64,000 nucleotides of DNA from NCBI GenBank assembly GCA_907165135.1, contig OU015568.1, positions 6,262,001-6,326,000 of the forward strand, written 5' to 3'. Position numbers and translations under genes: made by a program. The notes beneath the pieces are model-generated. The model had not been told where the DNA came from. It searched no databases and saw only the letters and a program-made list of their open reading frames with translations. Origin of the DNA: Oikopleura dioica (Eukaryota; Animalia; Chordata). This document shows positions 1 through 37,190 of the stretch, in pieces (within the stretch, counting starts at the first letter, position 1; every line of letters begins with the position of its first letter).

Positions 1-3000
1 AAATAGGTGATAGAGATGATCTTGGCGGTTTTTCCATAGCAACCATCGGAGTCGACGCGACCTGAGAAGATTTCCTCCCCCATGCGACTTCGACCCGGAC
101 TTTTCCATCGGTTTGGAAGTAGGAACAGGCGATTTTTGTGGGACTTTCGACTTAACGATTTCGGTTAAATGTGGGAATACGTACTCGGCCTCGTAGTAAT
201 CAATCCAGCGTAAGTCGTGATTTCGTTCTGCGGCGTGAACCACGTGTTCTCGATGGATGAAATCACGTTGTCCTTTCTTATCTTCGACCATGACGACCCA
301 GTCGTTGCTCGAAACGGCTTTCAGGGGACCTACCCAGCGTTCCTTCTTGCTTTTAGCGTCGGTCAGGTTTTCTCGCTTAATGTACACGACAGCGCCAGCG
401 GGATTGGTCTCGGCTTAGGCTCGTTTTTCAGCCTGTGCTCCATGGCTCGGTCAGCAGCCTCCATCGCAGTTTTCACAATGGCTTCCGCCGATTTCGCTAA
501 AGCTCCAACATTGAGACCAAATACCTGAGGTGTTTCCGCTGTCATTTCTGCGCCAGTAGAGTGGGTGAAAGTACTTTTTCGGCCAAACCAAACTTCTCGC
601 GGTGAAATTTTCGTGCTTTTGTTTTTCACACTATTGAGCGCGCGCATCACGTGGGGAACGCAGTCGGCCCAAGTTTTTCGACCGGAAGATGAGTTGACCA
701 TGCAGAATAGACTGTTTTTGATAGTCCGATTCGCTCTTTCTGCGAAAGCGTTTGATTGAGGGTGAAATGCGGTACTTATTGTATGTTTTATCTGGTTAAG
801 CTTACACATTTCGTCAATCACGCTTGCGCAGAAGTGGGTACCTCTGTCACTGTGTAGATGTTTCGGCAAGAAATCCATGGGAAGGAAGACCTTGTAGATG
901 AGCGCTTTTGCGGCGCAGATAGCAGTGTCGGACCGTGTCGGAATGCACCAAGTGTAGCGAGAGAAAGTGTCCGCCACCACCAAATAATACTTGAATCCGC
1001 CAGCGGGAGGCATACAAGCGAAATCGATCTGAATCGATTCGCCAGCTGTTTTTCCACGACGAAGGGTTCCAAGTGGCGGTTTGGTACGAGTTCCAGCAGA
1101 TCCTTTTCTGCGTAGGCAAGGGACGCAGCTGTGGACGTAGTTAGAAACATCGTCTTGAAATGAAGGCCACCAAACGTCCTCTAATCGCTCTAAAGTCCGC
1201 GGCTCGCCCAGATGACCGGACAAGTCGTGAGCTAGAAAGAGAAAGTGACTTTTTACCGCTTCCGGTACCACCGCCCGCGCGCCAGATTTGAATTGACACA
1301 TCAAGCACCCGGTAGTGTTATCCAGGAACAGAGCTTTTTCCATCTTGAGTAGAGACGATTGTCGGTGGTCGGAGTCCTTCACCAGCGATTTTATGTCCAG
1401 TGGCTCCTTACCAGATTCCAGAAAAGTGATGATTGCACTCAGAGCAGAGTCCTCCCTTTGATAGTCCAGAATGTTATTATAATTCGCTGACACCAACGGA
1501 ATCTCCATTGGCGCCGCGATAGCCTTGACGTTTACCTTATGTATCTTCACCTCTGATAAAGTGATTTTCTCCGGAAACTGATTTTCGTTCCAGAAAGGGA
1601 CGAAGACACGTACTGGTGAATTCTTGTCGATTTCGTACTCGCGACCAACGGGAAACTCGGAGTCGTATCCAAGTGATTTGTCGTCCTCGCCAGGTCTGCG
1701 GCTCATAAAGTCGGCGAATTGATTTTCTGATCCCTTGATGTAGACAATGTGAAAATCGAATTCTTCCAATCGGCTTTGCCATCGGCTTATTTTAGAATTC
1801 TTGAACTTCTTTTGTGTAGGAAGATCAAAGATCGGTGGTCTGTGTGAATCTGAAAGAATCTACCTTTCAGGAGCTTTTCCAGTCGCTCGCAGCACCAGAC
1901 AATGCTAAACATTTCCTTTTCTGAAGTGTTCCATTTTCTTTCAGCTTTGTTGAAGGTGTGGGAAATCGCGCTTACTAGGTGCACTCTCCCGCCATACTCT
2001 TGTAGCAGGACGCCACCCGCTGCGTACAGGCTCGCGTCTGTGTAGAGATGAAAAGACTCGTCAAAGTTAGGAAAACTTATGACTGGAGTCTCGGAGAGTC
2101 GTCGTTGAATTTCCTTGAGCGCCAAATCCGCTTCTTTGGTCCACTTGAAACAATTTGTTTCGTTCGCCGAATTTCGAACATCGTTTATGGGCTTCATTCT
2201 GCTCGAGAAGCAACCGGATGAAATAGCTTCGCCCATTTTCGTTTCTAGAAAACCTCGGATCCAATTCAATGACCCGATTAATGAAGCTAACTCCTTTTGG
2301 GAGCGTGGGGTTTCATCTGACGAAGAGCGGAGACTTGCGCAGGGTCCGGTTTGATTCCATCTTCGTTGATGATTCGGCCCAAAAGTGAGCTTCGGATTGT
2401 AGGAAAGAGCACTTTTCGCCCTTGAGTTTAGCGTTAAACTTGCGGAGCGCGATGAATAGGTTTCGGAGAGTGTTATAATAGCAGCTGAAAGTCTTCCCAA
2501 AACACACTATGTCATCGATATAAGAAAGCATCTTTTTCCTGGTGGGGCTTGAGTCGAGAATTGTGTTTACGACGCGCGAGAATATATTCCCCGAGCATCG
2601 ATAACCGAATGGTAGTCTGCAGAAGGCGTAAGATTTCCCACCCCACTGGAAGGAAGTCTTGTACCTGTCGCTTTTCTTTACAGGGCACTGCCAATATCCA
2701 CTTCGTAGATCAACTGTGGCGAAAAACTTATTGCCCGGTCCAATGTTCGCGATCGTATCCTCCATGCTTGGGAGATGGTAAGGGTCGGATTTGTCGGAAA
2801 GGCATTTGTTCAGGCTGTTTTTGTAGTTGATGCAGAAGCGCATTTCCCCAGATTTCTTAGGAATAGGCAATACCGGGCTGTTAAACCCTTTCTGGTCCTT
2901 GATCTCTTCTATTATTTTCGTTTCGAGCAGTTCAGAGATGTGATCGCTGACCTGACCATGAAAAGCTTGCGGAATCGGGTGTTGACTGATGTTTCGACTC

Positions 3001-4717
3001 GTACCATCAGTCGGGATTTCGATCTCGAACGGGAATTCACCCATTTTTTGACCGTCGCAGCCGAATCTGTCGTCGAATTCCAAACACAGCTCGGCGACCA
3101 TCTTCTTTTGCCCCGGGTCTGCGTCTGCTGGTAGGGTAATTCCGAGTTTTTGCTTCGCTAGCTGAATGGGGCACCTGACTGCGTTCTTGTTCGGTGCGTC
3201 CAGCTTTGGGACTTCTCGTGGTGGTTGAGTGCGGGACCGATCGCTGTCTTTGACCGTTGATCTAGTCGTCAAGTATTTCTTGATTTCGGTCCGCTTCACT
3301 TCGTCCAGCTTCACCACTTGAGTCTCAGTTTGTGTGAAGGCTTCGTTGTAGCAAAATGAGAGAGTACGATTCTTGTTGTCGACTGTGAAGCTGTCCGTCA
3401 TCGCATTCTCTAGTATATCGCGGCCCAGTAGACTTGGATATTTACTGCCTGGCATGATGGTGAGATTCAAGGAGAATGCAGGGCCACCATTGAATGATAA
3501 GCGGCAGGGAAGGATACCCATCGGCTGCTCGGCGGGGATATTTGGGCTGAAACCGGTAACCTTGAAGGGGCAGGGCTTCAGCATCTGGAGAAATTCGTCG
3601 GGAACGTAAGCAGCGGACAGACAGGAGGACTCGGCTCCGCTGTCGACTTCCATCGATACGTCAAAACTTTTAGAGCCCGTAAAGATGGTAGCCGAAGCGA
3701 AATAAGCCTTTCCTGGTCGCTTCTTCTTCACTGTGTAAAAGTGAACGTCGAATGGTTGGAAATCTTCGACGTTCTTAGTCGTATTTATCTTCTTGGGTTC
3801 TGGTTGTTTATCGTCTTTCCCATCCTTAGAATCGGTGCTGGCGCGCTTAGCATTCTTCTTCTTTTGTTCTTATTTCTGTTGAAGTGCTGAGAGACGGTCG
3901 CGTTGTCAACTCGATTCTGTCTTGTAGATTGGGCGAGACGGCAGAGTTCGTTGATATCGTAAACTTTTGAGAGGCTTGGAAGGATTGCGTTGAAAACGTC
4001 TGGTTCTTCTTTCCTAAGGTTCAAGTACAACATCATCGTCGAGAATATGTCGAATATTTCATCGACCCCGGCGTCGGCTGACTTCTCTTGTCGGAAGGAG
4101 TTCAGAGTCGCTTGCTTCGCCTCGTTCATTTTTTGCAGGACGTTGGCGGTGTAGTGTGCAAACGGCTTCGAATGGTCGTATTCGACGTCGAAAACTTCGC
4201 TTAGCTTCAGTAAGTAGTGACTCTTCGCGGCGAATGATTTCTCTAGCAGCGCCTTGGCCGATTTCCAGTCTTGACAATTCAGAAATTCGGTTCCAAGTGA
4301 GCGTTCGATGTTCAAGTCGAAGTGGCTGTACACTGCTGCGATGAAAGGCTGTTCACGTGAAGGTCTGTCGCGGACGTAGGCGCGGTGATAAATGTCGGCT
4401 CTGCCCAAGAAGGTGTTGAAAGATGTGTTGCATGCGGCGTCCAGCTTTGGCAAGTCTTGGACGTGACGAGACCAGGTAGTGGCCACCCATGCTTCTTCTC
4501 TCATTGTCGCACTCGTAGAGTCTTTTCCTTGATCAAGCTCGCAGGTAAGAAGCGTTGTACTGAGCTGTTCTAATTTTACTCTGCTTTCTGTGATCAAGGG
4601 CTCTAGGCTTGGCTTTAGTGATTCGTCATTTCGCACTTGTTCCTCGAGGTAGTTTACTCGATCGTTTATGCTTCTTATTTCGGTGACGGTTTCTAGCAGT
4701 GATTTGTTCGCCGCCAT
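1..4717 (-). CDS. gag-pol polyprotein of copy 1, broken into ORFs 3785-4717, 2313-3731, 1787-2500 and 363-1769 by five apparent 1-bp deletions
   Basis: Motifs VDSGAES (protease), SYIDD (RT), LYTDAS (RNase H), HDLSGH...CVPC and the D-D-E triad (integrase). Each break is a 1-nt-shorter homopolymer relative to copy 2. Confidence 0.9.
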
Positions 4718-5222
4718 AGCTCGAAATATATCGGCAGTAAGGGTTAATGGGCCTTGGATTACCTTTCAGGCCCTCAGAAAATACTGCGACTAAAAGTCGC
4801 AATATGATGAGCTGAGGTGCCTTTTGCGCAAACGCCCGACGATTTCTCTGTCCAGCGATTGTCGAAATTTCCAGGTCTGGTCCAAGGGTCGATTTTTCGT
4901 AAACTTCTCTCGATTTTTGGTGAAAAGTGGCGAAAGAATTATGTTTTTCTGAGTATTTTAGGTTTTCCCCGGCGTGCGTGCGTGGTTGCGTGGGCGCGAC
5001 TTTGGGCGCGTGGGTCGTGGTGGCGCTCGTGCGGTGGCGCTCGCTCGGGGTGGTGTTGGTGTGGTGCGGCGCGGAAAATTCTCTGAGTGGAGTTTCTCCG
5101 GCGGCGCGGTGGCGGTTGGTGATTCGGTTCCCCTCGACTCCGCTGACGGCCAATCAGCGTCCAAGTTGCGAAACTTCGGTTGTCGATGGCGGAAAAATTT
5201 ATCTTTTCTCCAACGGGACTAC

Positions 5223-5232
5223 TCTGACACCA
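5223..5232 (-). promoter_or_regulatory. Primer-binding site (tRNA-Leu), copy 1
   Basis: TGGTGTCAGA lies 1 nt after the LTR end. It equals the first 10 nt of the tRNA-Leu PBS TGGTGTCAGAAGTGGGAT. Confidence 0.8.
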
Positions 5233-5233
5233 C

Positions 5234-5489
5234 TGAAGGGATCCTAGCTTCTGCTGAATCTCCCACTTCTAGCGTAGTTTGCCTGCTCTCTATATCTGGA
5301 CGAAGGAAGAAAACGAGTAAAGTATCTTTGACGTCTGTATTTCGAGCTGGAGTAAAATAGAGGTTAATTCACGAACTGCGAGAATTACCGAATGAAGAGA
5401 AATACACGGCGGCGACCGAGCAAAGCTCGATCTAGATAAGCAAGTGACCTTAGGGGACGAGGGAGTCTAACGAATCTAAGATCCCAATA
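5234..5489 (-). repeat. 5' LTR of copy 1 (256 bp, TATTGGGATC...GATCCCTTCA)
   Basis: Matches 15551-15805 and the reverse complement of 22056-22311, with imperfect inverted termini. Confidence 0.93.
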
Positions 5490-11846: not shown

Positions 11847-12737
11847 TTATGGAACTCTATTATTTGCGCAATATAAATATCTAAGCCGTACCAAAATCAG
11901 AAGAGCGCAAGTACCAATAATGGTGATGATGGTAATAGTGACAATTCCAGTTTGAGTATTGAAAAAATTGATTGTTTCTGTAATTTCAGCGTTTTCAGCA
12001 GCATCAGCGACCCCTTTTGAATCTATTCGTGTATTCATATCCAATCATGAATGAAAAATACCTCTTCCAAAGTACCTCCCCCATCTTGTAATTCCGCAAC
12101 AGGCTCATCAACACCTGCTTGTGCTAGAATTTCATTCGAATTCGCAAAGTTAACGTTAACTTGTGATGAAACTTCTTGCCTCCTAAAAAAGGTTTTCTTT
12201 TATCGTTTTCAAGTTATTTTTACGTCTTTGAAGAGAGAAAGCTGCCAGTAATCTTCAACGGAGCAACAGTACTGCTTTTAGCAGTAGAAGCGGGTGTGGA
12301 GGTTTCAAGATCGTTTCTTAGGTCGAAAAGTTTCAAGAATGGATTTGACTCTTCCTCTTCTGGAAGTTCGCCGCAGCCCTCTTCAGTGGCAGTTTCCGGC
12401 TCTGCTGTTGTCGAAGTGATAATACTAGTTGTCGTTGTTGAACTGGTCGTGGTCGTTTCGACAGTCGAAGTCGATGTTGCTGTAGTGGAGCTGGAGGTTG
12501 TAGTCGCTGTGGGTTTGATTGGCTGTACTTGAGTATTTCCGAAACTCACGATGCATTCAGAAAAGAGCGTTCCTGTAGCAATATCTTCAACGCAAAAACA
12601 GTAGTGAACTGCCTTCGTCCTTCGCCATCAAGGCCATTTAAACTCGTGACATTTGAAAAGTTGAATTCGTAGCGATTTTTGGCATGGACCAGGACAAGAA
12701 AACTCTGGAAAAAGAATATTCTGAAGAAGGGAGACAT
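11847..12737 (-). CDS. Mucin-like type I membrane protein (signal peptide, Thr/Ser-rich stalk, TM)
   Basis: ORF 12546-12737 has a signal-like N-terminus, 12220-12549 has poly-Thr runs, and 11847-12044 has TM GIVTITIITIIGTCALLILV followed by basic residues. Confidence 0.55.
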
Positions 12738-13574: not shown

Positions 13575-15089
13575 GAGAAATGCAGCTGCAAGAGCAAAAA
13601 CGTGATAGGCACGTTCAAGCTGAAGGGAGAGACGAACTTCGAAACCAAGTGCTTGGGAACGTTCAAAAATGAAAAAGGCGTCAAATTCGATCGCTGGCAA
13701 GTTGCCTGCTCCAATCTCAACGAGGTTTGTTGATAAACGCCTCTCGGTTTTTTCGCCACCGGGAAAGGCAAATCTTTCGAAATTAAGACTCAGGCTTCTC
13801 CCTGCTCTTAGTTCAGGATCCTGTGTAGAAAACCTGAGTCAGGGTCCGAAAGATCTTCAACGAAAAACAAAGCCGCTTACTTTGCGGCTTCGGTTAAAAG
13901 AAAGCCGCGTAGCGGCTTTTCGTTAAAGATTTTTCTGACCCTGACTCGGGTTTTCTCCACCGATTTCTGAGCTCAGTCTCTTTCATGAGTTCTTCCCTAC
14001 TGTTAGGACTCTCCTTAGGAAGCTCAAGAAAGATTCAACTTAGAAGCGATTAGATTTTCGATCGAGTCAGCAAGGCATGCCGCATGCCCCTTTGTCCAAT
14101 TTCCCCGCTCTTTCATGTCAGAAATCTCATTTCCAAAAGAGCATGAAATCGGCATTTCGCTGTGGGAAGGTTGCGCATGACGTCAATTCTGACCAATTCC
14201 AACCCAAACTGCCCTCTTTTTCCAGCCATTTCTTCCCTTTTTCTTTTCAGAGAGCTGACTTTGTGCCCAAAGTCTGGCCGTTCAAAGATGGCTCTGGCAA
14301 TTCCATCGTTCACGTCAAGCAGCCACCATCAGACAAGACTTGCAAAAAGGGCCTGGCGAAGATTTTTAAGCGAAATCGAGTGATCAGATGCGAACATGAC
14401 GAGAGCAAGCTGACGGGCTGCCAGTGCGGCGAATTTAAAGACGGGTAAAATCACTCCAATCCCTTCTTTTTCAATGATTTCTAGTATTTCGAAATCGATG
14501 AACACGGCGAAGCAGGAAAAATTGGCCTTGACCGCGACTTGTGCAAATACAGAATCAGCTGAGAGCGAGATCGAGACTTGGAAACTTCACTGTGATTCGA
14601 ACGGAAACGGAGTCATCGATAATGATGAGGAGGCAAAGACCGTCTCGGTCAATACTAAAGCAAATGAGTTCTATTGCAAAGGTACGCAAAGACCAGAAAA
14701 GATATTCTTTCATCGAAAATTAGTGAAAAAGACGATCTCGGAAGGACTAAAATGCTCAAAACCAGCTGGAGCAACCTGCTTGTGCGACGATTTCTGGGAC
14801 CATTTCGACTACGAAGTCGACTTTAAAAAAGAGCACAAAAAGGGCATCAAGATTGTGACTGAATGCGTCAGCGGAAGTTTTCGCATGACACTTGGAAAAT
14901 CACAGCAGAAAAGGATGGAAAAGAATGTGGTATTTCGATGGTGAAGAAACTCAAGCACGACAATGAAAAGGTAAGAAATCGAGAATCATTTTTACGTTCA
15001 ATTTTCAATTTTCAGGAGCGATGTTTGAGCAAATTAAAGAGCGACATCAAGACTTTCGTCAAAGAAAATAATATTGCTAAGTTCTGTTA
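13575..15089 (+). CDS. Multi-exon protein with repeated Cys-containing modules (CxC...C...W-x3-C), probably secreted, family unknown
   Basis: Frames CSCK...TKC...RWQVACSN, CQC...ATC...TWKLHCDSNGNG and CLC...TEC in 13580-13720, 14250-14445 and 14500-14940. The start codon was not found. Confidence 0.45.
13820..13960. mobile_element. MITE family A (TIR CCTGTGTAGAAAACCTGAGTCAGGG) with two internal AAGCCGC hairpins
   Basis: Inverted terminal repeats; same termini as five other copies in the window. Confidence 0.8.
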
Positions 15090-15550
15090 AAAACTCCCTT
15101 TTCCTGATGTACTTATTGTAACTCAAACTTTTCGCAAAAAGCAATATGCTCAAGTTCATTTCCCATTTTTATATATTTTTTCATCTTTATGTGCTGGTCA
15201 TTTCCTGATAATAAAAACAAGTGTGGTCTACACTACAACGTATTATTCTAGTGCAAAGGTAGTCTGGAAAGCTGTCTCCTTGAATCTAGGAGTCCTAGAT
15301 ATTCCCAGAGGCAAGATTAATGTTTTTGTCGATCTTTGGAACTAAAAACACTATATGAATTTTGATGGGTGCAAATTTGAGAGGGTTTAGCGAAATAAAA
15401 GCTTGCATCATTTGGCTCCAAAGGGCCCTGAAGGCAGTTTTGCTTGGTGGCAAGCTCGAATGCATGTTCAGCAGAGTGCTGGGAGAGCGCTTTGCTCGGC
15501 GCGATTTCGCCGCCGCTAGGGAAGGTAGGGCAACTCCTTAACGTAGGCAT

Positions 15551-15805
15551 TGAAGGGATCCTAGCTTCTGCTGAATCTCCCACTTCTAGCGTAGTTTGCC
15601 TGCTCTCTATATCTGGACGAGTGAAGAAAACGAGTAAAGTATCTTGACGTCTGTATTTCGAGCTGGAGTAAAATAGAGGTTAATTCACGAACTGCGTGAA
15701 TTACCGAATGAAGAGAAATACACGGCGGCGACCGAGCAAAGCTCGATATAGATAAGCAAGTGACCTTAGGGGACGAGGGAGTCTAACGAATCTAAGATCC
15801 CAATA
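15551..15805 (-). repeat. 3' LTR of copy 2 (255 bp), containing a 9-bp-stem hairpin at 15681-15703
   Basis: Bounded by the TSD on one side and GGGGG (PPT) on the other. TAATTCACG/CGTGAATTA inverted repeat. Confidence 0.93.
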
Positions 15806-15810
15806 CCCCC
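15806..15810 (-). promoter_or_regulatory. Short polypurine tract (GGGGG) abutting the 3' LTR
   Basis: The G5 run immediately precedes the LTR start TATTGGG, both here and in the inverted copy (22051-22055). Confidence 0.65.
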
Positions 15811-16111
15811 ATGAGACTGAAACGTCCTCTAAGGCCAAAGTGTGTGATTTTTGCAGGAGTATAAGCGTAAGATGAGTAACATGGCAGGTTCGAAACGTCG
15901 AGGCAGTCTGATTCGCGTTAAAAACCCTTTTTGGGAAAAAGCTTGAATCAGATGCGAAGTTTTCGTGATGTCCGAGCGGTGATGACATGAAGGAGTAGCT
16001 GCACATGTAGAAGAACTCAAAATACGTCGGCGACGGTAAACTGTGATAATTTCCGTACCTTTTCAGGCCCCGGTCGATGAATAGGGGACCTGAGTGGGGC
16101 AGTACTTGCGC

Positions 16112-19100
16112 TTAGTCGTATGACTGACCCGAGTTTGTGCCGATGTTTAGAGGTTCGACGGGCCTCGTTTCACGGTGTGCTCGTTTTGTATGTTTCGGGA
16201 GATGAGCTGCTCCAACTTCGGTTAAAGTCGCATTCGGATCGGCGCCGGCTGAGTATTGACGATCTGGTGAAGACTTTGGACGGGTTCTTTTCTTGCTGTT
16301 TTCAGTTGCTGAGCCCTCAACTACTGTTGAATTATGTTTATCGACTGACATATGGCTATTGTCGGGCGCAGCAACCTCCGAAATCACTGTAGCATCAGCT
16401 GACATGTCCTCGGCAGTTTCATAAAGAGTACCACCAGAGTACCAGCGATCTGACGGCTCGGCTGGAGCTACCGACGAGTCCAAAATAGATGTAGCGGTTG
16501 TATCTCCCAGATTTTCCATGTCCAATCGGCGTCTACTTTCCAAAATAGGTGATAGAGATGATCTTGGCGGTTTTTCCATAGCAACCATCGGAGTCGACGC
16601 GACCTGAGAAGATTTCCTCCCCCCATGCGACTTCGACCCGGACTTTTCCATCGGTTTGGAAGTAGGAACAGGCGATTTTTGTGGGACTTTCGACTTAACG
16701 ATTTCGGTTAAATGTGGGAATACGTACTCGGCCTCGTAGTAATCAATCCAGCGTAAGTCGTGATTTCGTTCTGCGGCGTGAACCACGTGTTCTCGATGGA
16801 TGAAATCACGTTGTCCTTTTTTATCTTCGACCATGACGACCCAGTCGTTGCTCGAAACGGCTTTCAGGGGACCTACCCAGCGTTCCTTCTTGCTTTTAGC
16901 GTCGGTCAGGTTTTCTCGCTTAATGTACACGACAGCGCCAGCGGGGATTGGTCTCGGCTTAGGCTCGTTTTTCAGCCTGTGCTCCATGGCTCGGTCAGCA
17001 GCTTCCATCGCAGTTTTCACAATGGCTTCCGCCGATTTCGCTAAAGCTCCCACATTGAGACCAAACACCTGAGGTGTTTCCGCTGTCATTTCTGCGCCAG
17101 TAGAGTGGGTGAAAGTACTTTTTCGGCCAAACCAAACTTCTCGCGGTGAAATTTTCGTGCTTTTGTTTTTCACACTATTGAGCGCGCGCATCACGTGGGG
17201 AACGCAGTCGGCCCAAGTTTTTCGACCGGAAGATGAGTTGACCATGCAGAATAGACTGTTTTTGATAGTCCGATTCGCTCTTTCTGCGAAAGCGTTTGAT
17301 TGAGGGTGAAATGCGGTACTTATTGTATGTTTTATCTGGTTAAGCTTACACATTTCGTCAATCACGCTTGCGCAGAAGTGGGTACCTCTGTCACTGTGTA
17401 GATGTTTCGGCAAGAAATCCATGGGAAGGAAGACCTTGTAGATGAGCGCTTTTGCAGCGCAGATAGCAGTGTCGGACCGCGTCGGAATGCACCAAGTGTA
17501 GCGAGAGAAAGTGTCCGCCACCACCAAATAATACTTGAATCCGCCAGCGGGAGGCATACAAGCGAAATCGATCTGAATCGATTCGCCAGCTGTTTTTCCA
17601 CGACGAAGGGTTCCAAGTGGCGGTTTGGTACGAGTTCCAGCAGATCCTTTTCTGCGTAGGCAAGGGACGCAGCTGTGGACGTAGTTAGAAACATCGTCTT
17701 GAAATGAAGGCCACCAAACGTCCTCTAATCGCTCTAAAGTCCGCGGCTCGCCCAGATGACCGGACAAGTCGTGAGCTAGAAAGAGAAAGTGACTTTTTAC
17801 CGCTTCCGGTACCACCGCCCGCGCGCCAGATTTGAATTGACACATCAAGCACCCGGTAGTGTTATCCAGGAACAGAGCTTTTTCCATCTTGAGTAGAGAC
17901 GATTGTCGGTGGTCGGAGTCCTTCACCAGCGATTTTATGTCCAGTGGCTCCTTACCAGATTCCAGAAAAGTGATGATTGCACTCAGAGCAGAGTCCTCCC
18001 TTTGATAGTCCAGAATGTTATTATAATTCGCTGACACCAACGGAATCTCCATTGGCGCCGCGATAGCCTTGACGTTTACCTTATGTATCTTCACCTCTGA
18101 TAAAGTGATTTTCTCCGGAAACTGATTTTCGTTCCAGAAAGGGACGAAGACACGTACTGGTGAATTCTTGTCGATTTCGTACTCGCGACCAACGGGAAAC
18201 TCAGAGTCGTATCCAAGTGATTTGTCGTCCTCGCCAGGTCTGCGGCTCATAAAATCGGCGAATTGATTTTCTGATCCCTTGATGTAGACAATGTGAAAAT
18301 CGAATTCTTCCAATCGGCTTTGCCATCGGCTTATTTTAGAATTCTTGAACTTCTTTTTGTGTAGGAAGATCAAAGATCGGTGGTCTGTGTGAATCTGAAA
18401 GAATCTACCTTTCAGGAGCTTTTCCAGTCGCTCGCAGCACCAGACAATGCTAAACATTTCCTTTTCTGAAGTGTTCCATTTTCTTTCAGCTTTGTTGAAG
18501 GTGTGGGAAATCGCGCTTACTAGGTGCACTCTCCCGCCATACTCTTGTAGCAGAACACCACCCGCTGCGTACAGGCTCGCGTCTGTGTAGAGGTGAAAAG
18601 ACTCGTCAAAGTTAGGAAAGCTTATGACAGGAGTCTCGGAGAGTCGTCGTTGAATTTCCTTGAGCGCCAAATCCGCTTCTTTGGTCCACTTGAAACAATT
18701 TGTTTCGTTCGCCGAATTTCGAACATCGTTTATGGGTTTCATTCTGCTCGAGAAGCAACCGGATGAAATAGCTTCGCCCATTTTCGTTTCTAGAAAACCT
18801 CGGATCCAATTCAATGACCCGATTAATGAAGCTAACTCCTTTTGGGAGCGTGGGGGTTTCATCTGACGAAGGGCGGAGACTTGCGCAGGGTCCGGTTTGA
18901 TTCCTTCTTCGTTGATGATTCGGCCCAAAAAGTGAGCTTCTGATTGTAGGAAAGAGCACTTTTCGCCCTTGAGTTTAGCGTTAAACTTGCGGAGCGCGAT
19001 GAATAGGTTTCGGAGAGTGTTGTAATAGCAGCTGAAAGACTTCCCAAAACATACTATGTCATCGATATAAGAAAGCATCTTCTTCCTGGTGGGGCTTGAG

Positions 19101-21265
19101 TCGAGAATCGTGTTTACGACGCGCGAGAATATATTCCCCGAGCATCGATAACCGAAAGGTAATCTGCAGAAGGCGTAAGATTTCCCACCCCACTGGAAGG
19201 AAGTCTTATACCTATCGCTTTTCTTAATAGGGCACTGCCAATATCCGCTCCGCAAATCAACTGTGGCGAAATACTTGTTGCCCGGTCCAATGTTCGCGAT
19301 CGTATCCTCCATGCTCGGAAGATGATATGGGTCGGATTTGTCGGAGAGGCATTTGTTCAAGCTGTTCTTGTAGTTGATGCAGAAGCGCATTTCCCCAGAT
19401 TTCTTAGGGATTGGCAGAACGGGGCTATTAAACCCTTTCTGGTCCTTGATCTCTTCTATTATTTTCGTATCGAGCAGTTCGGAGATGTGATCAGTGACCT
19501 GGCCATGAAAAGCTTGCGGAATAGGGTGTTGACTGATGTTTCGACTCGTACCATCAGTCGGGATTTCGATCTCGAATGGGAATTCACCCATTTTTTGACC
19601 GTCGCAGCCGAATCTGTCGTCGAAATCCAAACACAGCTCGGCGACCACCTTCTTTTGCCCCGGGTCGGCGTTTGCTGGTAGGGTAATTCCGAGTTTTTGC
19701 TTCGCTAGCTGAATGGGGCACCTGGCTGCGTTCTTGTTAGGTGCGTCCAGCTTTGGGACTTTTGGTGGCGGTTGAGTGCGGGATCGATCGCTATCCTTGA
19801 CCGCTGATCTAGTAGTCAAGTATTTCTTGATTTTGGTCCGCTTCACTCCGTCCAGCTTCACCACTTGAGTCTCAGTTTGTGTGAAGGCTTCGTTGTAGCA
19901 AAATGAGAGAGTACGATTCTTATTGTCGACTGTGAAGCTGTCCGTCATCGCATTCTCTAGTATATCGCGGCCCAGTAGACTTGGGTATTTACTGCCTGGC
20001 ATAATGGTGAGATTCAGGGAGAATGCAGGGCCACCATTGAATGATAAGCGGCAGGGAAGGATACCCATCGGCTGCTCGGCGGGAATATTTGGGCTGAAAC
20101 CGGTGACCTTGAAGGGACAGGGCTTCAGCATCTGGAGAAATTCGTCGGGAACGTAAGCAGCGGACAGACAGGAGGACTCGGCTCCGCTGTCGACTTCCAT
20201 CGATACGTCAAAACTTTTAGAGCCCGTAATGATGGTAGCCGAAGCGAAATAAGCCTTTCCTGGTCGCTTCTTCTTCACTGTGTAAAAGTGAACGTCGAAT
20301 GGTTGGAAATCTTCAACGTTCTTAGTCGTATTTATCTTCTTGGATTCTGGTTGTTTATCGTCTTTCCCATCCTTAGAATCGTTGCTGGCGCGCTTAGCAT
20401 TCTTCTTCTTTTTGTTCTTATTTCTGTTGAAGTGCTGGGAGACGGTCGCGCTGTCAACTCGATTCTGTCTTGTGGATTGGGCGAGACGGCAGAGTTCGTT
20501 GATATCGTAAACTTTTGATAGGCTTGGAAGGATTGCGTTGAAAACGTCTGGTTCTTCTTTCCTAAGATTCAAGTACAGCATCATCGTCGAGAATATGTCA
20601 AATATTTCATCGACCCCGGCGTCGGCTGACTTCTCTTGTCGGTAAGAGTTCAAAGTCGCTTGCTTCGCCTCGTTCATCTTTTGCAAGACGTTGGCGGTGT
20701 AGTGTGCAAACGGCTTCGAATGGTCGTATTCGACGTCGAAAACTTCGCTTAGCTTCAGTAAGTAGTGACTCTTCGCGGCGAATGATTTCTCTAGCAGCGC
20801 CTTGGCCGATTTCCAGTCTTGACAATTCAGAAATTCGGTTCCAAGTGAGCGTTCGATGTTCAAGTCGAAGTGGCTGTACACTGCTGCGATGAAAGGCTGT
20901 TCACGTGAAGGTCTGTCGCGGACGTAGGCGCGGTGATAAATGTCGGCTCTGCCCAAGAAGGTGTTGAAAGATGTGTTGCATGCGGCGTCCAGCTTCGGCA
21001 AGTCTTGGACGTGACGAGACCAGGTAGTGGCCACCCATGCTTCTTCTCTCATTGTCGCATTCGTAGAGTCTTTTCCTTGATCGAGCTCGCAGGTAAGAAG
21101 CGTTGTACTGAGCTGTTCTAATTTTACTCTGCTTTCTGTGATCAAGGGCTCTAGGCTTGGCTTTAGTGATTCGTCATTTCGCACTTGTTCTTCGAGGTAG
21201 TTTACTCGATCGTTTATGCTTCTTATTTCGGTGACGGTTTCTAGCAGTGATTTGTTCGCCGCCAT
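16112..21265 (-). CDS. Gag-Pol polyprotein (1717 aa, single ORF): Gag, aspartic protease, RT, RNase H, integrase, Ser-rich C-terminal extension
   Basis: DSG protease motif, YIDD, LYTDAS...EKE...TDH, HHCC zinc finger, QIDF / HSDRG / AERANR triad, GPL motif. No CCHC in Gag and no chromodomain seen. Confidence 0.97.
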   Translation of the reverse strand: MAANKSLLETVTEIRSINDRVNYLEEQVRNDESLKPSLEPLITESRVKLEQLSTTLLTCELDQGKDSTNATMREEAWVATTWSRHVQDLPKLDAACNTSFNTFLGRADIYHRAYVRDRPSREQPFIAAVYSHFDLNIERSLGTEFLNCQDWKSAKALLEKSFAAKSHYLLKLSEVFDVEYDHSKPFAHYTANVLQKMNEAKQATLNSYRQEKSADAGVDEIFDIFSTMMLYLNLRKEEPDVFNAILPSLSKVYDINELCRLAQSTRQNRVDSATVSQHFNRNKNKKKKNAKRASNDSKDGKDDKQPESKKINTTKNVEDFQPFDVHFYTVKKKRPGKAYFASATIITGSKSFDVSMEVDSGAESSCLSAAYVPDEFLQMLKPCPFKVTGFSPNIPAEQPMGILPCRLSFNGGPAFSLNLTIMPGSKYPSLLGRDILENAMTDSFTVDNKNRTLSFCYNEAFTQTETQVVKLDGVKRTKIKKYLTTRSAVKDSDRSRTQPPPKVPKLDAPNKNAARCPIQLAKQKLGITLPANADPGQKKVVAELCLDFDDRFGCDGQKMGEFPFEIEIPTDGTSRNISQHPIPQAFHGQVTDHISELLDTKIIEEIKDQKGFNSPVLPIPKKSGEMRFCINYKNSLNKCLSDKSDPYHLPSMEDTIANIGPGNKYFATVDLRSGYWQCPIKKSDRYKTSFQWGGKSYAFCRLPFGYRCSGNIFSRVVNTILDSSPTRKKMLSYIDDIVCFGKSFSCYYNTLRNLFIALRKFNAKLKGEKCSFLQSEAHFLGRIINEEGIKPDPAQVSALRQMKPPRSQKELASLIGSLNWIRGFLETKMGEAISSGCFSSRMKPINDVRNSANETNCFKWTKEADLALKEIQRRLSETPVISFPNFDESFHLYTDASLYAAGGVLLQEYGGRVHLVSAISHTFNKAERKWNTSEKEMFSIVWCCERLEKLLKGRFFQIHTDHRSLIFLHKKKFKNSKISRWQSRLEEFDFHIVYIKGSENQFADFMSRRPGEDDKSLGYDSEFPVGREYEIDKNSPVRVFVPFWNENQFPEKITLSEVKIHKVNVKAIAAPMEIPLVSANYNNILDYQREDSALSAIITFLESGKEPLDIKSLVKDSDHRQSSLLKMEKALFLDNTTGCLMCQFKSGARAVVPEAVKSHFLFLAHDLSGHLGEPRTLERLEDVWWPSFQDDVSNYVHSCVPCLRRKGSAGTRTKPPLGTLRRGKTAGESIQIDFACMPPAGGFKYYLVVADTFSRYTWCIPTRSDTAICAAKALIYKVFLPMDFLPKHLHSDRGTHFCASVIDEMCKLNQIKHTISTAFHPQSNAFAERANRTIKNSLFCMVNSSSGRKTWADCVPHVMRALNSVKNKSTKISPREVWFGRKSTFTHSTGAEMTAETPQVFGLNVGALAKSAEAIVKTAMEAADRAMEHRLKNEPKPRPIPAGAVVYIKRENLTDAKSKKERWVGPLKAVSSNDWVVMVEDKKGQRDFIHREHVVHAAERNHDLRWIDYYEAEYVFPHLTEIVKSKVPQKSPVPTSKPMEKSGSKSHGGRKSSQVASTPMVAMEKPPRSSLSPILESRRRLDMENLGDTTATSILDSSVAPAEPSDRWYSGGTLYETAEDMSADATVISEVAAPDNSHMSVDKHNSTVVEGSATENSKKRTRPKSSPDRQYSAGADPNATLTEVGAAHLPKHTKRAHRETRPVEPLNIGTNSGQSYD

Positions 21266-21765
21266 AGCTCGAAATATATCGGCAGTAAGGGTTTATGGGC
21301 CTTGGATTACCTTTCAGGCCCTCAGAAAATACTGCGACTAAAAGTCGCAATATGATGAGCTGAGGTGCCTTTTGCGCAAACGCCCGACGATTTCTCTGTC
21401 CAGCGATTGTCGAAATTTCAAGGTCTGGTCCAAGGGTCGATTCTTCGTAAACTTCTCTCGATTTTTGGTGAAAAGTGGCGAAAGAATTATGTTTTTCTCA
21501 GTATTTTAGGTTTTCCCCGGCGTGCGTGCGTGGTTGCGTGGGCGCGACTTTCGGCGCGTGGGTCGTGGTGGCGCTCGTGCGGTGGCGCTCGCTCGGGGTG
21601 GTGTTGGTGTGGTGCGGAAAATTCTCTGAGTGGAGTTTCTCCGGCGGCGCGGTGGCGGTTGGTGATTCGGTTCCCCTCGACTCCGCTGACGGCCAATCAG
21701 CGTCCAAGTTGCGAAACTTCGGTTGTCGATGGCGGAAAAATTTATCTTTTCTCCAACGGGACTAC

Positions 21766-21775
21766 TCTGATACCA
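21766..21775 (-). promoter_or_regulatory. PBS of copy 2 (TGGTATCAGA, one G>A change versus copy 1)
   Basis: Same position as in copy 1, 1 nt after the U5 end. Confidence 0.75.
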
Positions 21776-21826
21776 CTGAAGGGATCCTAGCTTCTGCTGA
21801 ATCTCCCACTTCTAGCGTAGTTTGCC

Positions 21827-22330
21827 GTCGCCGACGTATTTTGAGTTCTTCTACATGTGCAGCTACTCCTTCATGTCATCACCGCTCGGACATCACGAAA
21901 ACTTCGCATCTGATTCAAGCTTTTTCCCAAAAAGGGTTTTTAACGCGAATCAGACTGCCTCGACGTTTCGAACCTGCCATGTTACTCATCTTACGCTTAT
22001 ACTCCTGCAAAAATCACACACTTTGGCCTTAGAGGACGTTTCAGTCTCATGGGGGTATTGGGATCTTAGATTCGTTAGACTCCCTCGTCCCCTAAGGTCA
22101 CTTGCTTATCTAGATCGAGCTTTGCTCGGTCGCCGCCGTGTATTTCTCTCCATTCGGTAATTCACGCAGTTCGTGAATTAACCTCTATTTTACTCCAGCT
22201 CGAAATACAGACGTCAAAGATACTTTACTCGTTTTCTTCACTCGTCCAGATATAGAGAGCAGGCAAACTACGCTAGAAGTGGGAGATTCAGCAGAAGCTA
22301 GGATCCCTTCAGTGGTGTCAGAAGTGGGAT
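21827..22330 (+). repeat. Inverted block within the 5' LTR: 229 bp 3'UTR+PPT, full LTR (22056-22311), 18-nt tRNA-Leu complement (22313-22330)
   Basis: Reverse complement of 15551-16034 followed by TGGTGTCAGAAGTGGGAT. Flanked by LTR remnants 21777-21826 and 22332-22383. Confidence 0.92.
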
Positions 22331-22583
22331 GAAGCAAGTGACCTTAGGGGACGAGGGAGTCTAACGAATCTAAGATCCCAATAGCATGCAGTCGCTGCCT
22401 GCCCTTCGCTCAAGGCTTCGATTACGTTGGCCACATGGTGGAGTCCGAAGATCGACGCCGATCTTGGTGGTGCAGCACCGCCACCTTCTTTTATTTCGAC
22501 TCAAAAGAAAGAATTATCCATTTGCGCCTCATTCTACTAACTACACTCCTTCTTCACGAGTTCTTAATCTTAAAAAAGGGAAA

Positions 22584-24075
<1,492 letters not shown>

Positions 24076-31400: not shown

Positions 31401-33236
31401 TCTTCTTTCGTACCTTGGCGCAGATATCACCATAGCCGACAGTCGACATGGTGACCATCAATAAATAAACGCACTCCCAGTATGTTAGGCTGACAGAATT
31501 GGAAAAGTCTGCCCATGGGTCGCCCGTATTCTCGACCAAGTGGATGAAGCCGGCTCCAGTGAGCCAGATTGAAAGAAAAATCGACACCAGATTGACCAGT
31601 TTAATTGATTGCGACGTCTTGAGGATATTTACAAACTGCAGGATCTCGCTGAATTGCAGCAGCCGCAGTGCTCGGAGAAAACGCAGGCCAAGCCACGTGC
31701 GGTTCAGGTAGACAGAAACGAACACAGGTGGGACGGTGAAGAAGTCGACGATAGAATTGACCTCGAGCCAGAACCAGAGCTTAGTGCGGATTATGGTAAA
31801 TCAATCGAACCCTCCTTTCCTAAAAGATGGTCAACAGTCGGCTGTTCTTCTATTCTGGGCTCTGCAGCCTGCGTAGAAAACCTGAGTCAGGGTCTGAAAG
31901 ATCTGAAAAAGAGCTACAAAGATCTTTCAAACCCTGACTCAGGTTTTCTACTCAGGCTGCCGGGCCAAGCTTCTATCTTTCTATCAAATAATGATGATCA
32001 TCTGTGAATCCGTTCCTTGTCATTTGCCGCTATAAAACGAAGCCCAAAGTAGAGTAGAAAGAATATATTAAAAGCCATATCAATCTGTAGCGTCGTATCG
32101 GAGTAGAAGTTTTTACAAGTTTCGATCGGATCAGATGAGTCGATGAAGTAGATTACCAGAGCGCCGATACTGTTTTATGGTGATTTTGAGTGCCGCTCTT
32201 TATTTTCCAGATGGGAATTAAGTGCTTTCGATTAATTGAAAATTGGAAGAAAATCGAGAATCACCAGTTGCCTGAGCAGAAAGACCAGAACGACGAGAAT
32301 CCTGCCCGTAAGGGTTTGGGCGGAGATCATGACACCTGCCCAGTCCTTCACCGCTGTCATCCATCCCACCTCTGCCGCGTTGGCTTTTGACGCCGCTGCG
32401 TCCCCATTACGATCCTGAACACGCGCCACTCGTTAATATTCAGATGCGGATGTTATGCGTTACGCCGTTCCCGATTTTATTTTTCTTCTTTTTCAATGAC
32501 AAGCGTTTATGTTTTATATATTAGCCACGCGCGCATTTTTAACCCATTGCACATTAAAACCATTTTCTTGAACTTTAATTATAAGGAAAAGCCGCTTTGC
32601 GGCTTTGTTTTAAAAAACCAAAATATTGGTCGTAATGTAGAAATAGGTTAAAAATTTTAACCTATTTTAATTCAAGTGGAAAAAATAAAAGTTTCATGGC
32701 GAAACTATCTAACTCTCTTGATTCTCAACTCAAGAAAGAGAATAAATAATTCACATGTGCTCTCACCTTTTCGCCAAGTCGAGGAGGAATTGTCAATTGG
32801 CTTCGAGTGACGTTCTGGAGTCGATACGCCGCGCAGCACATGTAATTGAACGCGCGCTGAAACAGTCGGATTCGAAGTTGAATGAAATAAATCATGTTGA
32901 AATTGACCTTAGGAAACTATTGTTTTTATAGCATTAACTTTTAAGCGACTGCGAAAGGAAATTGAAGCTTCATAAAACCTTCAACTTTTTGACAAAAAGA
33001 AAATGATTAATGAACTCGTTATTTGCTAATTAGAATTTGTTGATTGTCGAATCCCATTCCCATAGTAAAATCAAGATCAGCCCGCCGACGAAAGTGACGA
33101 GCGAGCTGGCAAGGAATGCGTACCACATGCGCACATCTTCGCAATTTCTGATCTCCGGGTCAATTTTGATATATCTCTCATCTAAAAAAGCGCCGCCAAA
33201 GCCATTTAGGAAATAGTCCTCGGAAAAGTCCTCCAT
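25473..33236 (-). CDS. KCNMA1: Large-conductance Ca2+-activated K+ channel alpha subunit (BK, Slo1); 3' end approximate
   Basis: S0 [25 protein letters not shown]4 LRFLRALRL, pore TVGYGD, RCK1/RCK2 and Ca-bowl QFLDQDDDD...[11 protein letters not shown] across ~17 exons. Confidence 0.96.
27133..28556. mobile_element. 1.4-kb non-autonomous foldback element in a slo intron, with poly-C/poly-G-containing TIRs and subterminal CCCTTGTTCGC repeats
   Basis: TAACGTAC(C)nTAGCTCGCTCACATTTTGTGA... mirrored at 28490-28556. No internal ORF. Confidence 0.75.
27712..28087. repeat. Clustered (GAGCT)n pentamer arrays
   Basis: Many runs of GAGCTGAGCTGAGCTG, with an inverted run at 28066-28087. Confidence 0.9.
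31864..31960. mobile_element. MITE family A, short copy without hairpin modules
   Basis: Same TIR; intronic in slo. Confidence 0.8.
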
Positions 33237-33839
33237 CCTCTCTTTTTTCTCTCATCCGATCTCCATTCCTAATCTCATAAAAAAAGGTTGAAAAGAAGAA
33301 AGTCGCGATTTTCTCGAAAATTCGGGAAAAAAAAAGTTGTCTTCCTTGATTTTTTGATTTCCGCGTCTGGCAGGGGGGACCGCGCAGAATACGTTTCAGG
33401 TTTGCTCCGTTTTGCCGTTTTGGAATTTTACGACCGCGAAAAAGAAAGGAAGCCTGACACTCTTTCTCTGGCTTTTGCTTATCAAGCGCGTCTGGAGAGA
33501 CGGAGATTTAAGTTAATTGATTCTAGTTGGTCATTTGAAGATGAAAGTTTCTGACAATTTTATTTCGCGAGGAAGGGAGTAGTCGGCAATTAAACTATAT
33601 TTTACTTCTGAACTATCGCCGCCACGGCCGTGCGGAATTTTATGAGCGACTGCAGATCCTTCCTGACACGGGAATTAGGGCGCTTTAGTCCAGTGAGGAA
33701 ATTTTACGACAGTTTTATGATGCTCTCAGCACATTTTTTTTCAGGAAGGGATTAAAGTTGCCATCAACTGTCAGGTAGTCTAAGATTCAAGGAAAATAGT
33801 AATTTTGGGGACCCCAATTTCTGATCAATAATTTTCGTT

Positions 33840-34016
33840 AGAATTCCGATTCAGCTGAAGTAAAATAACAGCTGAAAATCGAGAAGCCGCTTGCGGCTTC
33901 GAGTAACAAAAAGATTAAGCCGCGCGAAGCGCGGCTTTTCCATCTTCGTTTGCTCGAAGCCGCAAGCGGCTTCTCGATTTTCAGCTGTAATTTTACTTCA
34001 GCTGAATCGGAATTCT
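33840..34016. mobile_element. Palindromic element family B (arms contain AAAATCGAGAAGCCGCTTGCGGCTTCGAG)
   Basis: Near-perfect ~65-bp inverted arms with a central AAGCCGCG-CGAAG-CGCGGCTT hairpin. Confidence 0.75.
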
Positions 34017-34217
34017 GGCGAAAATTTGTCAGTCAGAAATCAAAATAGCTGTACAGCTATTTTCGCTATAAGAAGATGATATTATGTAGATATTTCCTTG
34101 TGACCCTTGCTTATTAGCTGAACAGATGTTCCACTTTTGATAGTACAATAATGAACTTTTGTAATAAAAGGATCTGTGTTAATAATAATATAGACTGTAC
34201 TTGGTATTCCATTGAGC

Positions 34218-35820: not shown

Positions 35821-37190
35821 GTCCAAAATTGTCGGTGAAAATTATAAAATATAGCCCAAGATTGTCGACTTTTCAAAGTATTTTGGATTACATGAGGGCT
35901 CGGCACGAAAATCTGCGAATAAAACCTGAGTCAGGGTCCTAAATGACACCTTATAAAAAGCCGCGCGCGGCTTATTTAAGAACGAAGCCGCGAAGCGGCT
36001 TTGCGCAAATTTCGCGGCTTCGTTTAAAAGCCGCAACGCGCTTTTCTTTGAGATCTTTTTGAACCCTGACTCAGGTTTTCTACGCAGGCTCTGGCTAAGG
36101 TCTAGCTAAGGGTAAGGGTCTGGTTGCTTGGAAATTTGATTGGCTTGTTGTAATGAAGCGAATATCTGATAGGATGCGGAAATTGAAAGTAAGTGCTGAC
36201 AGGGTGGTTACTCAAGTACAGTAAGCTAACGCGTAAAATGTTGGATAGCGATTCGAAAATTGATCGAGAGACGACAGGCGCTTAGCGCCAGAATTGGGAC
36301 ACGGCTTGGCAAAAATTAATTCAAGTACGGGATAAATAACAAAGTAGACTTGATGTTTTTGAATTCTGCTTAATTTATGAAAAATCAAGCGACAGCAAAA
36401 ATAAACAAGCAACTTAGCCTGAATTTTTAATTCAATCTTCTCGAGGACAAAAAAGACGAAAAGAAGATTCGCAGACCATTAGTGACCATCATCCATATTC
36501 CGAGTCTTTTGGAACGAGTCCCTTGGGATTTGATTCCGAAATGAATAGACTCGATTTGAATTGATAATCAAATCAAAAAGCCTTTCTTGGTATTTCTATT
36601 ATCATATCAATAATCTACAATTATGCTCGCAAGAGTTTGGACTTAAGGGTATCCTACCGTTAAACAAGGGATCCATATTTTTCCAACAGTATTTTGTCAA
36701 TTTGAAAGAGACTGTAAATCTAAAGAAATCTGTGATGTTTTCTTTCTCCAAAATAAGTTGTTTTCTGATCGGTCTGTAACTGACAGTACTGCCCCACATG
36801 AGTTACTGAGTTACGTTAATCACTAGATTAATCGATCACCCGTCTGATCGAGCGACGCGTTGCAAGATCTTACTGTCAGGAAAAAGACAGTAGAGTATTC
36901 AGGAGCTACTGCATTTGCATGTCTGATTTGCGACAAATCACTGTATTGTTCTCGTCTGAGAGAATCTTCCTCTGAATACCCAACCAGCTCATTCATTCAT
37001 TTAAATTTGAACGAACTTAATTACAGTCGGCATACAAACAAAGACGGAGGAAAATAACTGTAATTATTGACTGTTCTAAAATGGCTTACTGAGCCACTTT
37101 TTTCCCAGGTTTTTTGAGCTTTTCGGCTATTTAAAAATTGACAATCTTGGGCGATTTTTTCGAAATTTTACCGACAATCTTGGACCGAAA
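35821..37190. repeat. Degenerate ~55-bp inverted repeat pair 1.3 kb apart (possible old DNA transposon)
   Basis: 35821-35875 is the approximate reverse complement of 37130-37190 (GACAATCTTGGGC...ACCGACAATYTTGGAC). Confidence 0.45.
35914..36090. mobile_element. MITE family A with about four hairpin modules
   Basis: AAAACCTGAGTCAGGG / CCCTGACTCAGGTTTT termini and internal AAGCCGC...GCGGCTT units. Confidence 0.8.

What the first reader, a model, noticed from the sequence alone, without database searches (positions are those of the whole stretch)
21777..22383. 5' LTR contains a fossil of reverse transcription: inverted 3'UTR-PPT-LTR plus exactly 18 nt copied from the tRNA primer
Seen, reading the + strand (the element's minus strand): 50 bp of U5, a switch at microhomology AGTTT(G/A)CC, 229 bp of 3'UTR+PPT, a full LTR, TGGTGTCAGAAGTGGGAT, one extra G, then a return via GAT to the last 52 bp of U3 and an intact GCAT TSD. 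The 18-mer differs from the element's own PBS (TGGTRTCAGAGTAGTCCC), so it was not copied from the element. Established: it is the complement of the tRNA-Leu 3' end, and RT stops after 18 nt at m1A58. Inference: after second-strand transfer the nascent minus strand jumped onto a tRNA-bearing minus strand, ran to the m1A58 stop, jumped back and finished U3. The product was then integrated normally. This would identify the primer directly and record a double template switch in the germline.
Basis: partly seen in the sequence, partly recalled or inferred. Interest (0 to 1): 0.8.

Follow-up and report, generated by a model that had tools for sequence, protein, structure and literature searches.

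The report
Reverse-transcription scar in a retrotransposon LTR
One end of a jumping gene carries a backwards copy of its own other end, followed by exactly the 18 letters a reverse transcriptase copies from its tRNA-Leu primer, which is a rare natural record of how the element was copied and names its primer.

Summary
Copy B of a Ty3/gypsy-type LTR element lies on the minus strand at 15551-22383. It has a 4-bp GCAT target duplication and one open 1717-aa gag-pol frame. Its 5' LTR is a 607-bp composite. Read on the + strand, it holds 50 nt of ordinary LTR, then an inverted block, then 52 nt of ordinary LTR. The block is 229 nt of 3'UTR+PPT, a full 256-nt LTR, the usual spacer G, the 18-mer TGGTGTCAGAAGTGGGAT and one extra G. 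The element's own primer site shares only its first 10 nt with the 18-mer. The 18-mer is the exact complement of positions 59-76 (with CCA) of tRNA-Leu in fly and mammal sequences from papers. Its gene-encoded part (59-73) also ends ARAGORN-called tRNA-Leu genes in metagenome contigs. It stops one base short of A58, where m1A58 is known to halt plus-strand strong-stop synthesis. The best reading is an error of reverse transcription made before integration. The second has no real microhomology. Not shown: the host's own tRNA-Leu, the primer sites of other family copies, and the timing relative to integration. Rivals are end-joining capture of a cDNA intermediate, a tRNA-free route through a 10-nt U5 box, and misassembly.

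The parts
15547..15550 (.). Target-site duplication GCAT, left of copy B
15551..15805 (-). Ordinary 3' LTR of copy B (255 nt)
15806..16034 (-). 3'UTR with the short G-run polypurine tract next to the 3' LTR. This stretch is found again, inverted, in the composite LTR.
   Evidence: 229/229 identical
16112..21265 (-). gag-pol of copy B: one open frame of 1717 aa with RT, then RNase H, then integrase zinc and core domains
21766..21776 (-). Copy B's own primer-binding site (10 nt, with one G-to-A difference from copy A and from the tRNA complement) plus the spacer G next to the LTR
21777..22383 (-). Composite 5' LTR of copy B (607 bp): ordinary-orientation LTR ends of 50 and 52 nt around an inverted block
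21827..22055 (+). Inverted copy of the 3'UTR+PPT (229 nt)
22056..22311 (+). Inverted complete LTR (256 nt). It shares 3 copy-B-specific sites and has 3 private differences from B's 3' LTR.
22312..22331 (+). Spacer G, the 18-mer (22313-22330, complement of tRNA-Leu positions 59-76) and one extra G that sits opposite A58
22275..22284 (+). U5 box AGAAGTGGGA inside the inverted LTR, identical to nt 8-17 of the 18-mer and so complementary to tRNA-Leu 60-69. The same box in ordinary orientation is at 21804-21813 (-) and in the other LTR copies.
   Evidence: 12 of 5000 simulated LTRs reach a 10-nt word
22384..22387 (.). Target-site duplication GCAT, right of copy B
1..5489 (-). Copy A of the same family, cut by the window start. 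It has an ordinary 256-nt 5' LTR at 5234-5489 and a primer site G+TGGTGTCAGA at 5223-5233. Its gag-pol is broken.

Best explanation
Copy B is a Ty3/gypsy-type LTR retrotransposon whose DNA was mis-made during reverse transcription, before integration. While the 5' LTR was being completed, the growing minus-polarity strand had copied the primer site and 50 nt of LTR. It then left its template and re-annealed, through an 8-nt homology with one G.T wobble, to DNA of its own polarity. That DNA was a minus strand still carrying the tRNA-Leu primer, either its own 5' end or that of the co-packaged genome. Copying it produced, in sense orientation, 229 nt of 3'UTR, the PPT, a full LTR, the spacer G and 18 nt of the tRNA. 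Synthesis halted before m1A58. One extra G was added, either untemplated or misincorporated opposite m1A58. The end then moved to a plus-polarity LTR strand and ran off its 5' end, which gave a correct outer LTR terminus. Integrase inserted the product with a 4-bp duplication. Shown: the anatomy, the tRNA-Leu identity of the 18-mer, its end at position 59, and the block's copy-B lineage. Inferred: which molecules served as templates, the order of the steps, and the timing before integration.
For: Anatomy and junctions. The inverted LTR matches B's 3' LTR at the 3 sites that separate B from A, and the 3'UTR part is 229/229 identical, so donor and recipient are one lineage, as expected inside one particle. 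PPT-LTR-spacer-primer complement is the layout of a plus-polarity copy of a tRNA-bearing minus strand. The spacer G and the first 10 nt are in register with the element's ordinary LTR-G-primer-site layout. 18/18 nt match tRNA-Leu with CCA. In the metagenome scan, 109 of 129 matches of the 22-nt gene pattern, which covers the 15 gene-encoded nt of the 18-mer, end an ARAGORN tRNA: 68 Leu-CAG, 13 Leu-CAA with intron. Only 1 of those 109 tRNA genes is followed by CCA, so the TGG came from a mature tRNA, not from a gene. Termination at A59 because of m1A58: PMC11251516. m1A gives both RT arrest and misincorporation: PMC4787781. Only the 5' LTR is aberrant; from established knowledge of the pathway, that is the LTR built last, from plus-strand strong-stop DNA. 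At junction 1 the composite keeps the LTR-type G, so the homology lies behind the 3' end only for synthesis in the window's + direction (inference).
Against: The host's own tRNA-Leu genes were not seen: there is no tRNA in the window and the host is unidentified. No family copies other than A and B could be read, so a sibling with a full 18-nt primer site is not excluded. The intact target duplication does not date the rearrangement. Junction 2 has no real microhomology. The model leaves a heteroduplex in the 5' LTR, a normal plus strand against a composite minus strand, which replication or repair must have resolved. The LTR itself holds AGAAGTGGGA, so 17 of the 18 nt can in principle be assembled from element sequence alone.
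Confidence: 0.6

Rival explanations
1. The tRNA copy is genuine but the joining was cellular. A free reverse-transcription intermediate, a long plus-strand strong-stop-like DNA ending in the 18-nt tRNA copy, was captured by end joining into a break in the 5' LTR. That LTR belonged either to the unintegrated cDNA or to the already integrated copy B, and about 154 nt of it were lost.
For: [quoted passage not shown] Microhomology at one junction and a 1-nt insertion at the other are typical of end joining. The 18-mer end is a natural DNA terminus. An intact target duplication fits a later event inside the LTR.
Against: A random break would rarely fall in an LTR of the same family and lineage, whereas inside a particle all the partners are together (inference). 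The block carries B-specific sites. Yet a copy with this 5' LTR lacks a contiguous sense LTR from which to be transcribed, so the cDNA would have had to come from an unseen near-identical sibling.
Confidence: 0.2
2. No tRNA was copied in this event. Either the donor was a sibling, tandem or circular form whose primer site already was the full 18-mer, or the 18-mer was stitched from the element's own 10-nt primer site and its U5 box AGAAGTGGGA by an extra slip at the shared AGA.
For: The U5 box equals nt 8-17 of the 18-mer. With the primer site it covers 17 of the 18 nt. PPT-LTR-primer-site contiguity also exists in 1-LTR circles and tandem arrays (established knowledge).
Against: This needs at least one more template switch and leaves 2 nt unexplained instead of 1. 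Running on from the U5 box would give a different sequence at the junction (read). Both copies in the window have the 10-nt site followed by unrelated sequence. A near-identical sibling that differs in exactly the 8 nt needed to match a tRNA would itself be most simply a product of tRNA copying.
Confidence: 0.1
3. Assembly artefact: the composite LTR is a false join of repeat copies or a chimeric read.
For: The region is repeat-rich, and inverted repeats are classic sites of misassembly. No reads were available.
Against: The join rests on an 8-nt imperfect homology, too short to mislead an overlap or k-mer assembler (inference). The inverted LTR has 3 private differences from the 3' LTR. The 18-mer plus its G exists nowhere else in the window. 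Unique host DNA with a matching GCAT follows directly.
Confidence: 0.03

Closest known systems
Plus-strand strong-stop DNA of retroviruses and LTR retrotransposons, ended by m1A58 of the primer tRNA
   Same: LTR followed by a copy of exactly the last 18 nt of the primer tRNA (positions 59-76), stopping one base before A58 (PMC11251516).
   Different: The block begins 229 nt upstream of the PPT rather than at the first LTR base. It is fixed in the germline, inverted, inside the element's own 5' LTR. Normally only the part that matches the primer site survives.
Ty1 cDNA intermediates captured at chromosome breaks in yeast
   Same: 3'-LTR-containing cDNA fragments carrying nucleotides that exist only in cDNA become part of chromosomal DNA (PMC11372161). 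Junctions show microhomology or small insertions.
   Different: Those insertions sit at induced breaks in unrelated loci. Here the recipient is the same element's LTR, and the ends of the whole element are those of a normal integration.
[quoted passage not shown]
   Same: A short (10-nt) primer site; ordinary copies do not carry tRNA sequence beyond it.
   Different: This is a Ty3/gypsy-type element in an apparently animal host, primed by tRNA-Leu rather than initiator tRNA-Met. The evidence here is a natural aberrant copy, not an experiment.
HIV-1 proviruses with asymmetric LTRs
   Same: One LTR differs from the other because of misalignment or template switching during reverse transcription with two packaged genomes (PMC9278108).
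   Different: Those are deletions. No inverted LTR block and no tRNA copy is described there.
Bipartite primer sites of Ty1/Ty3 and the U5 primer-activation signal of HIV-1
   Same: A second stretch in the leader complementary to the T arm of the primer tRNA (PMC5371799; PMC11251516). The U5 box here is complementary to tRNA-Leu 60-69.
   Different: Pairing of the U5 box with the tRNA is untested here, and its conservation in relatives could not be examined.

Membership tests
Ty3/gypsy (Metaviridae-type) LTR retrotransposon | Direct long terminal repeats flanking an internal region, with a short target-site duplication | tested here: met
   LTRs of 255/256 nt and a 4-bp GCAT duplication
Ty3/gypsy (Metaviridae-type) LTR retrotransposon | pol domain order RT, then RNase H, then integrase | tested here: met
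   Pfam RVT_1 619-782, RT_RNaseH 885-988, Integrase_H2C2 1152-1207, rve 1227-1321 in the 1717-aa frame
Ty3/gypsy (Metaviridae-type) LTR retrotransposon | Primer site complementary to a tRNA 3' end next to the 5' LTR, and a purine tract next to the 3' LTR | tested here: met
   10-nt match to the tRNA-Leu 3' end after a spacer G. Only a short G-run precedes the 3' LTR.
Ty3/gypsy (Metaviridae-type) LTR retrotransposon | TG...CA LTR termini; recognisable gag and protease | tested here: inconclusive
   The LTR reads TA...CA in element sense. No Pfam gag or protease hit at E<=0.001 in the N-terminal 600 aa.
Canonical plus-strand strong-stop DNA | 3' end is an 18-nt copy of the primer tRNA ending before position 58 | tested here: met
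   18/18 against tRNA-Leu 59-76. The next base is G, not the T expected from read-through.
Canonical plus-strand strong-stop DNA | 5' end at the first base of the LTR (PPT-primed) | tested here: not met
   The block extends 229 nt upstream of the PPT
Nested insertion of a second element copy | The inserted piece has both LTR termini and its own target duplication | tested here: not met
   The block starts in mid-3'UTR and ends in the tRNA copy, with no duplication at its edges
LTR-circle junction or autointegration product | LTR-LTR junction, or LTR ends joined to internal target sequence | tested here: not met
   No LTR end abuts another LTR end or an internal target. The outer ends of the element are free and normally integrated.
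Host replication template switch between the two LTR regions of the integrated copy | All inserted bases are templated by nearby chromosomal sequence | tested here: not met
   B's 3' LTR is followed by host flank, not by the 18-mer. The 18-mer is unique in the window.
Donor copy lying next to a tRNA-Leu gene | The tRNA gene sequence lacks an encoded CCA | tested here: not met
   The 18-mer begins with TGG (the CCA complement). Only 1 of 109 tRNA genes with this 3' end is followed by CCA.

The most novel reading that the evidence does not exclude
The composite LTR may be a complete trace of one strand that left its templates only at natural stops and copied its own tRNA-bearing 5' end. On this reading the extra G is the base put in opposite m1A58, a germline imprint of a tRNA modification. 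Combined with the 10-nt primer site and the U5 box, it would show that an animal Ty3/gypsy element copies 18 nt of tRNA-Leu but normally discards the 8 unmatched bases at plus-strand transfer, and that it uses a split primer-binding site.
Probability: 0.25. Interest if true: 0.7.

Novelty: new variant of a known kind. Interest (0 to 1): 0.6.

Why it matters
Primer tRNAs of retrotransposons are usually guessed from a short complementarity; here that is only 10 nt. This copy records the primer directly as a tRNA-Leu. It also shows that the element's reverse transcriptase reads the primer up to the same position-59 stop as retroviruses, even though only 10 of those bases are kept in ordinary copies. 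It is a natural, germline-fixed example of non-homologous template switching onto like-polarity DNA, otherwise known mainly from cell-culture and yeast experiments. In the three literature searches aimed at it I found no description of this architecture. That is a limited library search, not proof of absence.

Tried and rejected
- **Host identification.** Exact look-ups of two host ORFs found nothing on record. A homology search with the ORF at 45339-46262 gave two unnamed relatives. Pfam on host ORFs gave only collagen repeats. Rfam found nothing in the window, and there is no tRNA gene in the window. The window is not taken for human.
- **Papers.** The Lauermann and Boeke papers are not held.
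- **Rejected origins.** Nested insertion, LTR-circle junction or autointegration, a host replication switch between the two LTR regions, and a donor copy next to a tRNA gene were each tested and rejected; the reasons are in the membership table.
- **Idea not supported.** The first departure point might be the 5' end of the genomic RNA, which would make R-U5 50 nt. A TATA-like ATATAG ends only about 6 nt upstream of that point (read), too close for a usual start site. I leave this open.
- The tRNA-gene pattern scan also brought in 13 matches followed by CCA that lie outside called tRNA genes. They may be retro-copies or retroelement primer sites. I did not read or use them.

Full report
**What is there.** The window looks eukaryotic and not human. 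It holds two same-orientation copies of one LTR element on the minus strand.
- Copy A (1-5489) is cut by the window start and has an ordinary 256-nt 5' LTR at 5234-5489.
- Copy B runs from 15551 to 22383 and is flanked on both sides by GCAT. Its 3' LTR (15551-15805) is ordinary. Its 5' LTR (21777-22383) is 607 bp long.
- The flanks of A and B differ, so they are separate insertions.

**The observation.** I compared the pieces separately and never joined them. On the + strand the composite LTR reads, in order:
- 50 nt identical to the start of the ordinary LTR;
- 229 nt that are the exact reverse complement of copy B's own 3'UTR and G-run PPT;
- a complete 256-nt LTR in the same inverted orientation;
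- the spacer G that also separates LTR and primer site in ordinary copies;
- the 18-mer TGGTGTCAGAAGTGGGAT;
- one extra G;
- the last 52 nt of the ordinary LTR.

So the block belongs to B's lineage and has aged as a separate sequence. That argues against an assembly duplicate.

**The junctions.**
- Junction 1 lies in AGTTTGCC (LTR) against AGTTTACC (donor). The composite keeps the LTR-type G. The full 8-nt homology could therefore guide re-annealing only if the strand was growing in the window's + direction, that is, with the element's minus polarity. The mismatch would be a G.T wobble. In the opposite direction only 2 nt would lie behind the 3' end.
- Junction 2 shows GAT homology only if the extra G is treated as an insertion. 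Aligned flush there is none.

**The 18-mer.** It occurs once in the window even with three mismatches allowed.
- The element's own primer site is G+TGGTGTCAGA followed by unrelated sequence. Copy B has one G-to-A difference from copy A. Only the first 10 nt are shared with the 18-mer.
- The full 18-mer is the exact complement of the 3' end, with CCA, of tRNA-Leu(CAA). This appears in a mouse probe (PMC7997516) and in a tRNA-Leu-CAA-2-1 sequence listed in a tRNA table (PMC10359600). The four Drosophila Leu-CAA genes end with the same bases before the CCA (PMC4536317).
- I scanned metagenome contigs with the 22-nt gene pattern taken from that paper. The scan gave 129 matches, and 109 lie at the 3' end of an ARAGORN-called tRNA. 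Of these, 68 are Leu-CAG without an intron and 13 are Leu-CAA with an intron. Most of the rest are intron-mode calls with other anticodons, probably mis-parsed.
- Only 1 of those 109 genes is followed by CCA. The TGG at the start of the 18-mer therefore points to a mature tRNA, not to a gene.
- Counting back from the 3' end, the 18 nt cover positions 59-76. The next tRNA base is A58.
- Plus-strand strong-stop synthesis terminates at A59 because of m1A58 (PMC11251516). m1A causes both arrest and misincorporation (PMC4787781). The extra G sits where A58 would be copied. Read-through would have given T.

The LTR contains AGAAGTGGGA 27 nt before its inner end. This is identical to nt 8-17 of the 18-mer. 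Only 12 of 5000 simulated LTRs reach a 10-nt shared word. Together with the primer site it covers 17 of the 18 nt. A tRNA-free route therefore exists on paper, but it needs an extra switch and leaves two bases unexplained instead of one. The box is more simply a second site complementary to the T arm of the primer, as in the bipartite sites of Ty1 and Ty3 (PMC5371799).

**The element.**
- Copy B has one open 1717-aa frame with RT, RNase H and integrase domains in the Ty3/gypsy order. Its gag-pol has no breaks.
- Over the part inside the window, copy A's gag-pol has 6 frameshifting indels relative to B and no substitution-made stop codons in B's register.
- The nearest protein relative in the word-index search is 62% identical over RT to integrase; the next is about 40% identical.

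**Mechanism.** PPT-LTR-spacer-tRNA copy is what a polymerase makes when it copies a minus-strand DNA that still carries its primer. That the block sits inverted in the 5' LTR means one growing strand changed template polarity twice. From established knowledge of the pathway, the 5' LTR is the one completed last, from plus-strand strong-stop DNA. That fits the normal 3' LTR.

I favour an error inside the particle, because donor and recipient are one lineage and would have been side by side there. The main rival keeps the tRNA copy but has cellular end joining capture the intermediate. Yeast Ty1 shows exactly such captured 3'-LTR cDNA pieces with cDNA-only nucleotides (PMC11372161). The target duplication cannot tell the two apart.

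**Not done.** I did not read the CCA-followed pattern hits.

Noticed in passing
window 21804-21813 (-), 22275-22284 (+), and the same place in the LTRs at 5234-5489 and 15551-15805: The LTR holds a 10-nt box, AGAAGTGGGA, complementary to tRNA-Leu positions 60-69 and 27 nt upstream of the 10-nt primer site. It may be the second half of a split primer-binding site (12 of 5000 simulated LTRs reach a word this long).
   Followed up: partly
window 1-5233 against 16543-21776: Copies A and B are unevenly alike, from 93% to 100% per 500 nt, with 103 substitutions and 7 indels. The pattern is mosaic and suggests recombinant ancestry or gene conversion. A's gag-pol carries 6 frameshifting indels, while B's is one open frame.
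   Followed up: partly
window 22056-22311 (+) and the + strand ORF at 22386-22844: The inverted full LTR points outward, towards the neighbouring + strand ORF (an ATG at 22585 starts a plausible coding run). It could act as a promoter for host sequence.
   Followed up: no
window 21766-21775 against 5223-5232: Copy B's own primer site differs from copy A's, and from the tRNA complement, by one G-to-A change. The 18-mer in the inverted block has the tRNA-type G.
   Followed up: partly
window 13806-13978, 31853-31971, 35898-36091, 48104-48213, 59954-60034, 61269-61503: A family of short inverted-repeat (MITE-like) elements sharing the core CCTGACTCAGGTTTTCTAC, in both orientations.
   Followed up: no
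window 33830-34026, 35967-36025, 58397-58510, 61338-61396, 63750-63808: A second short repeat family rich in GCGGCTTCG / CGAAGCCGC palindromes. One copy is a 77-nt hairpin pair.
   Followed up: no
window 12404-12497, 41701-42505, 44471-44591: GTTGTGGTCGT-type 9- to 15-nt periodic repeats on the + strand. They lie within minus-strand ORFs that encode Thr-rich and collagen-repeat proteins (Pfam Collagen for 43921-45240).
   Followed up: partly
L007, L018, L021, L041, L042, L051, L054, L067, L074, L076, L091, L105 (metagenome loci): 13 matches of the tRNA-Leu 3' 22-mer are followed by CCA and lie outside any called tRNA gene. They could be retro-copied tRNA or retroelement primer sites extending past position 58. 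They came in through a tRNA-gene pattern scan and were left unread.
   Followed up: no
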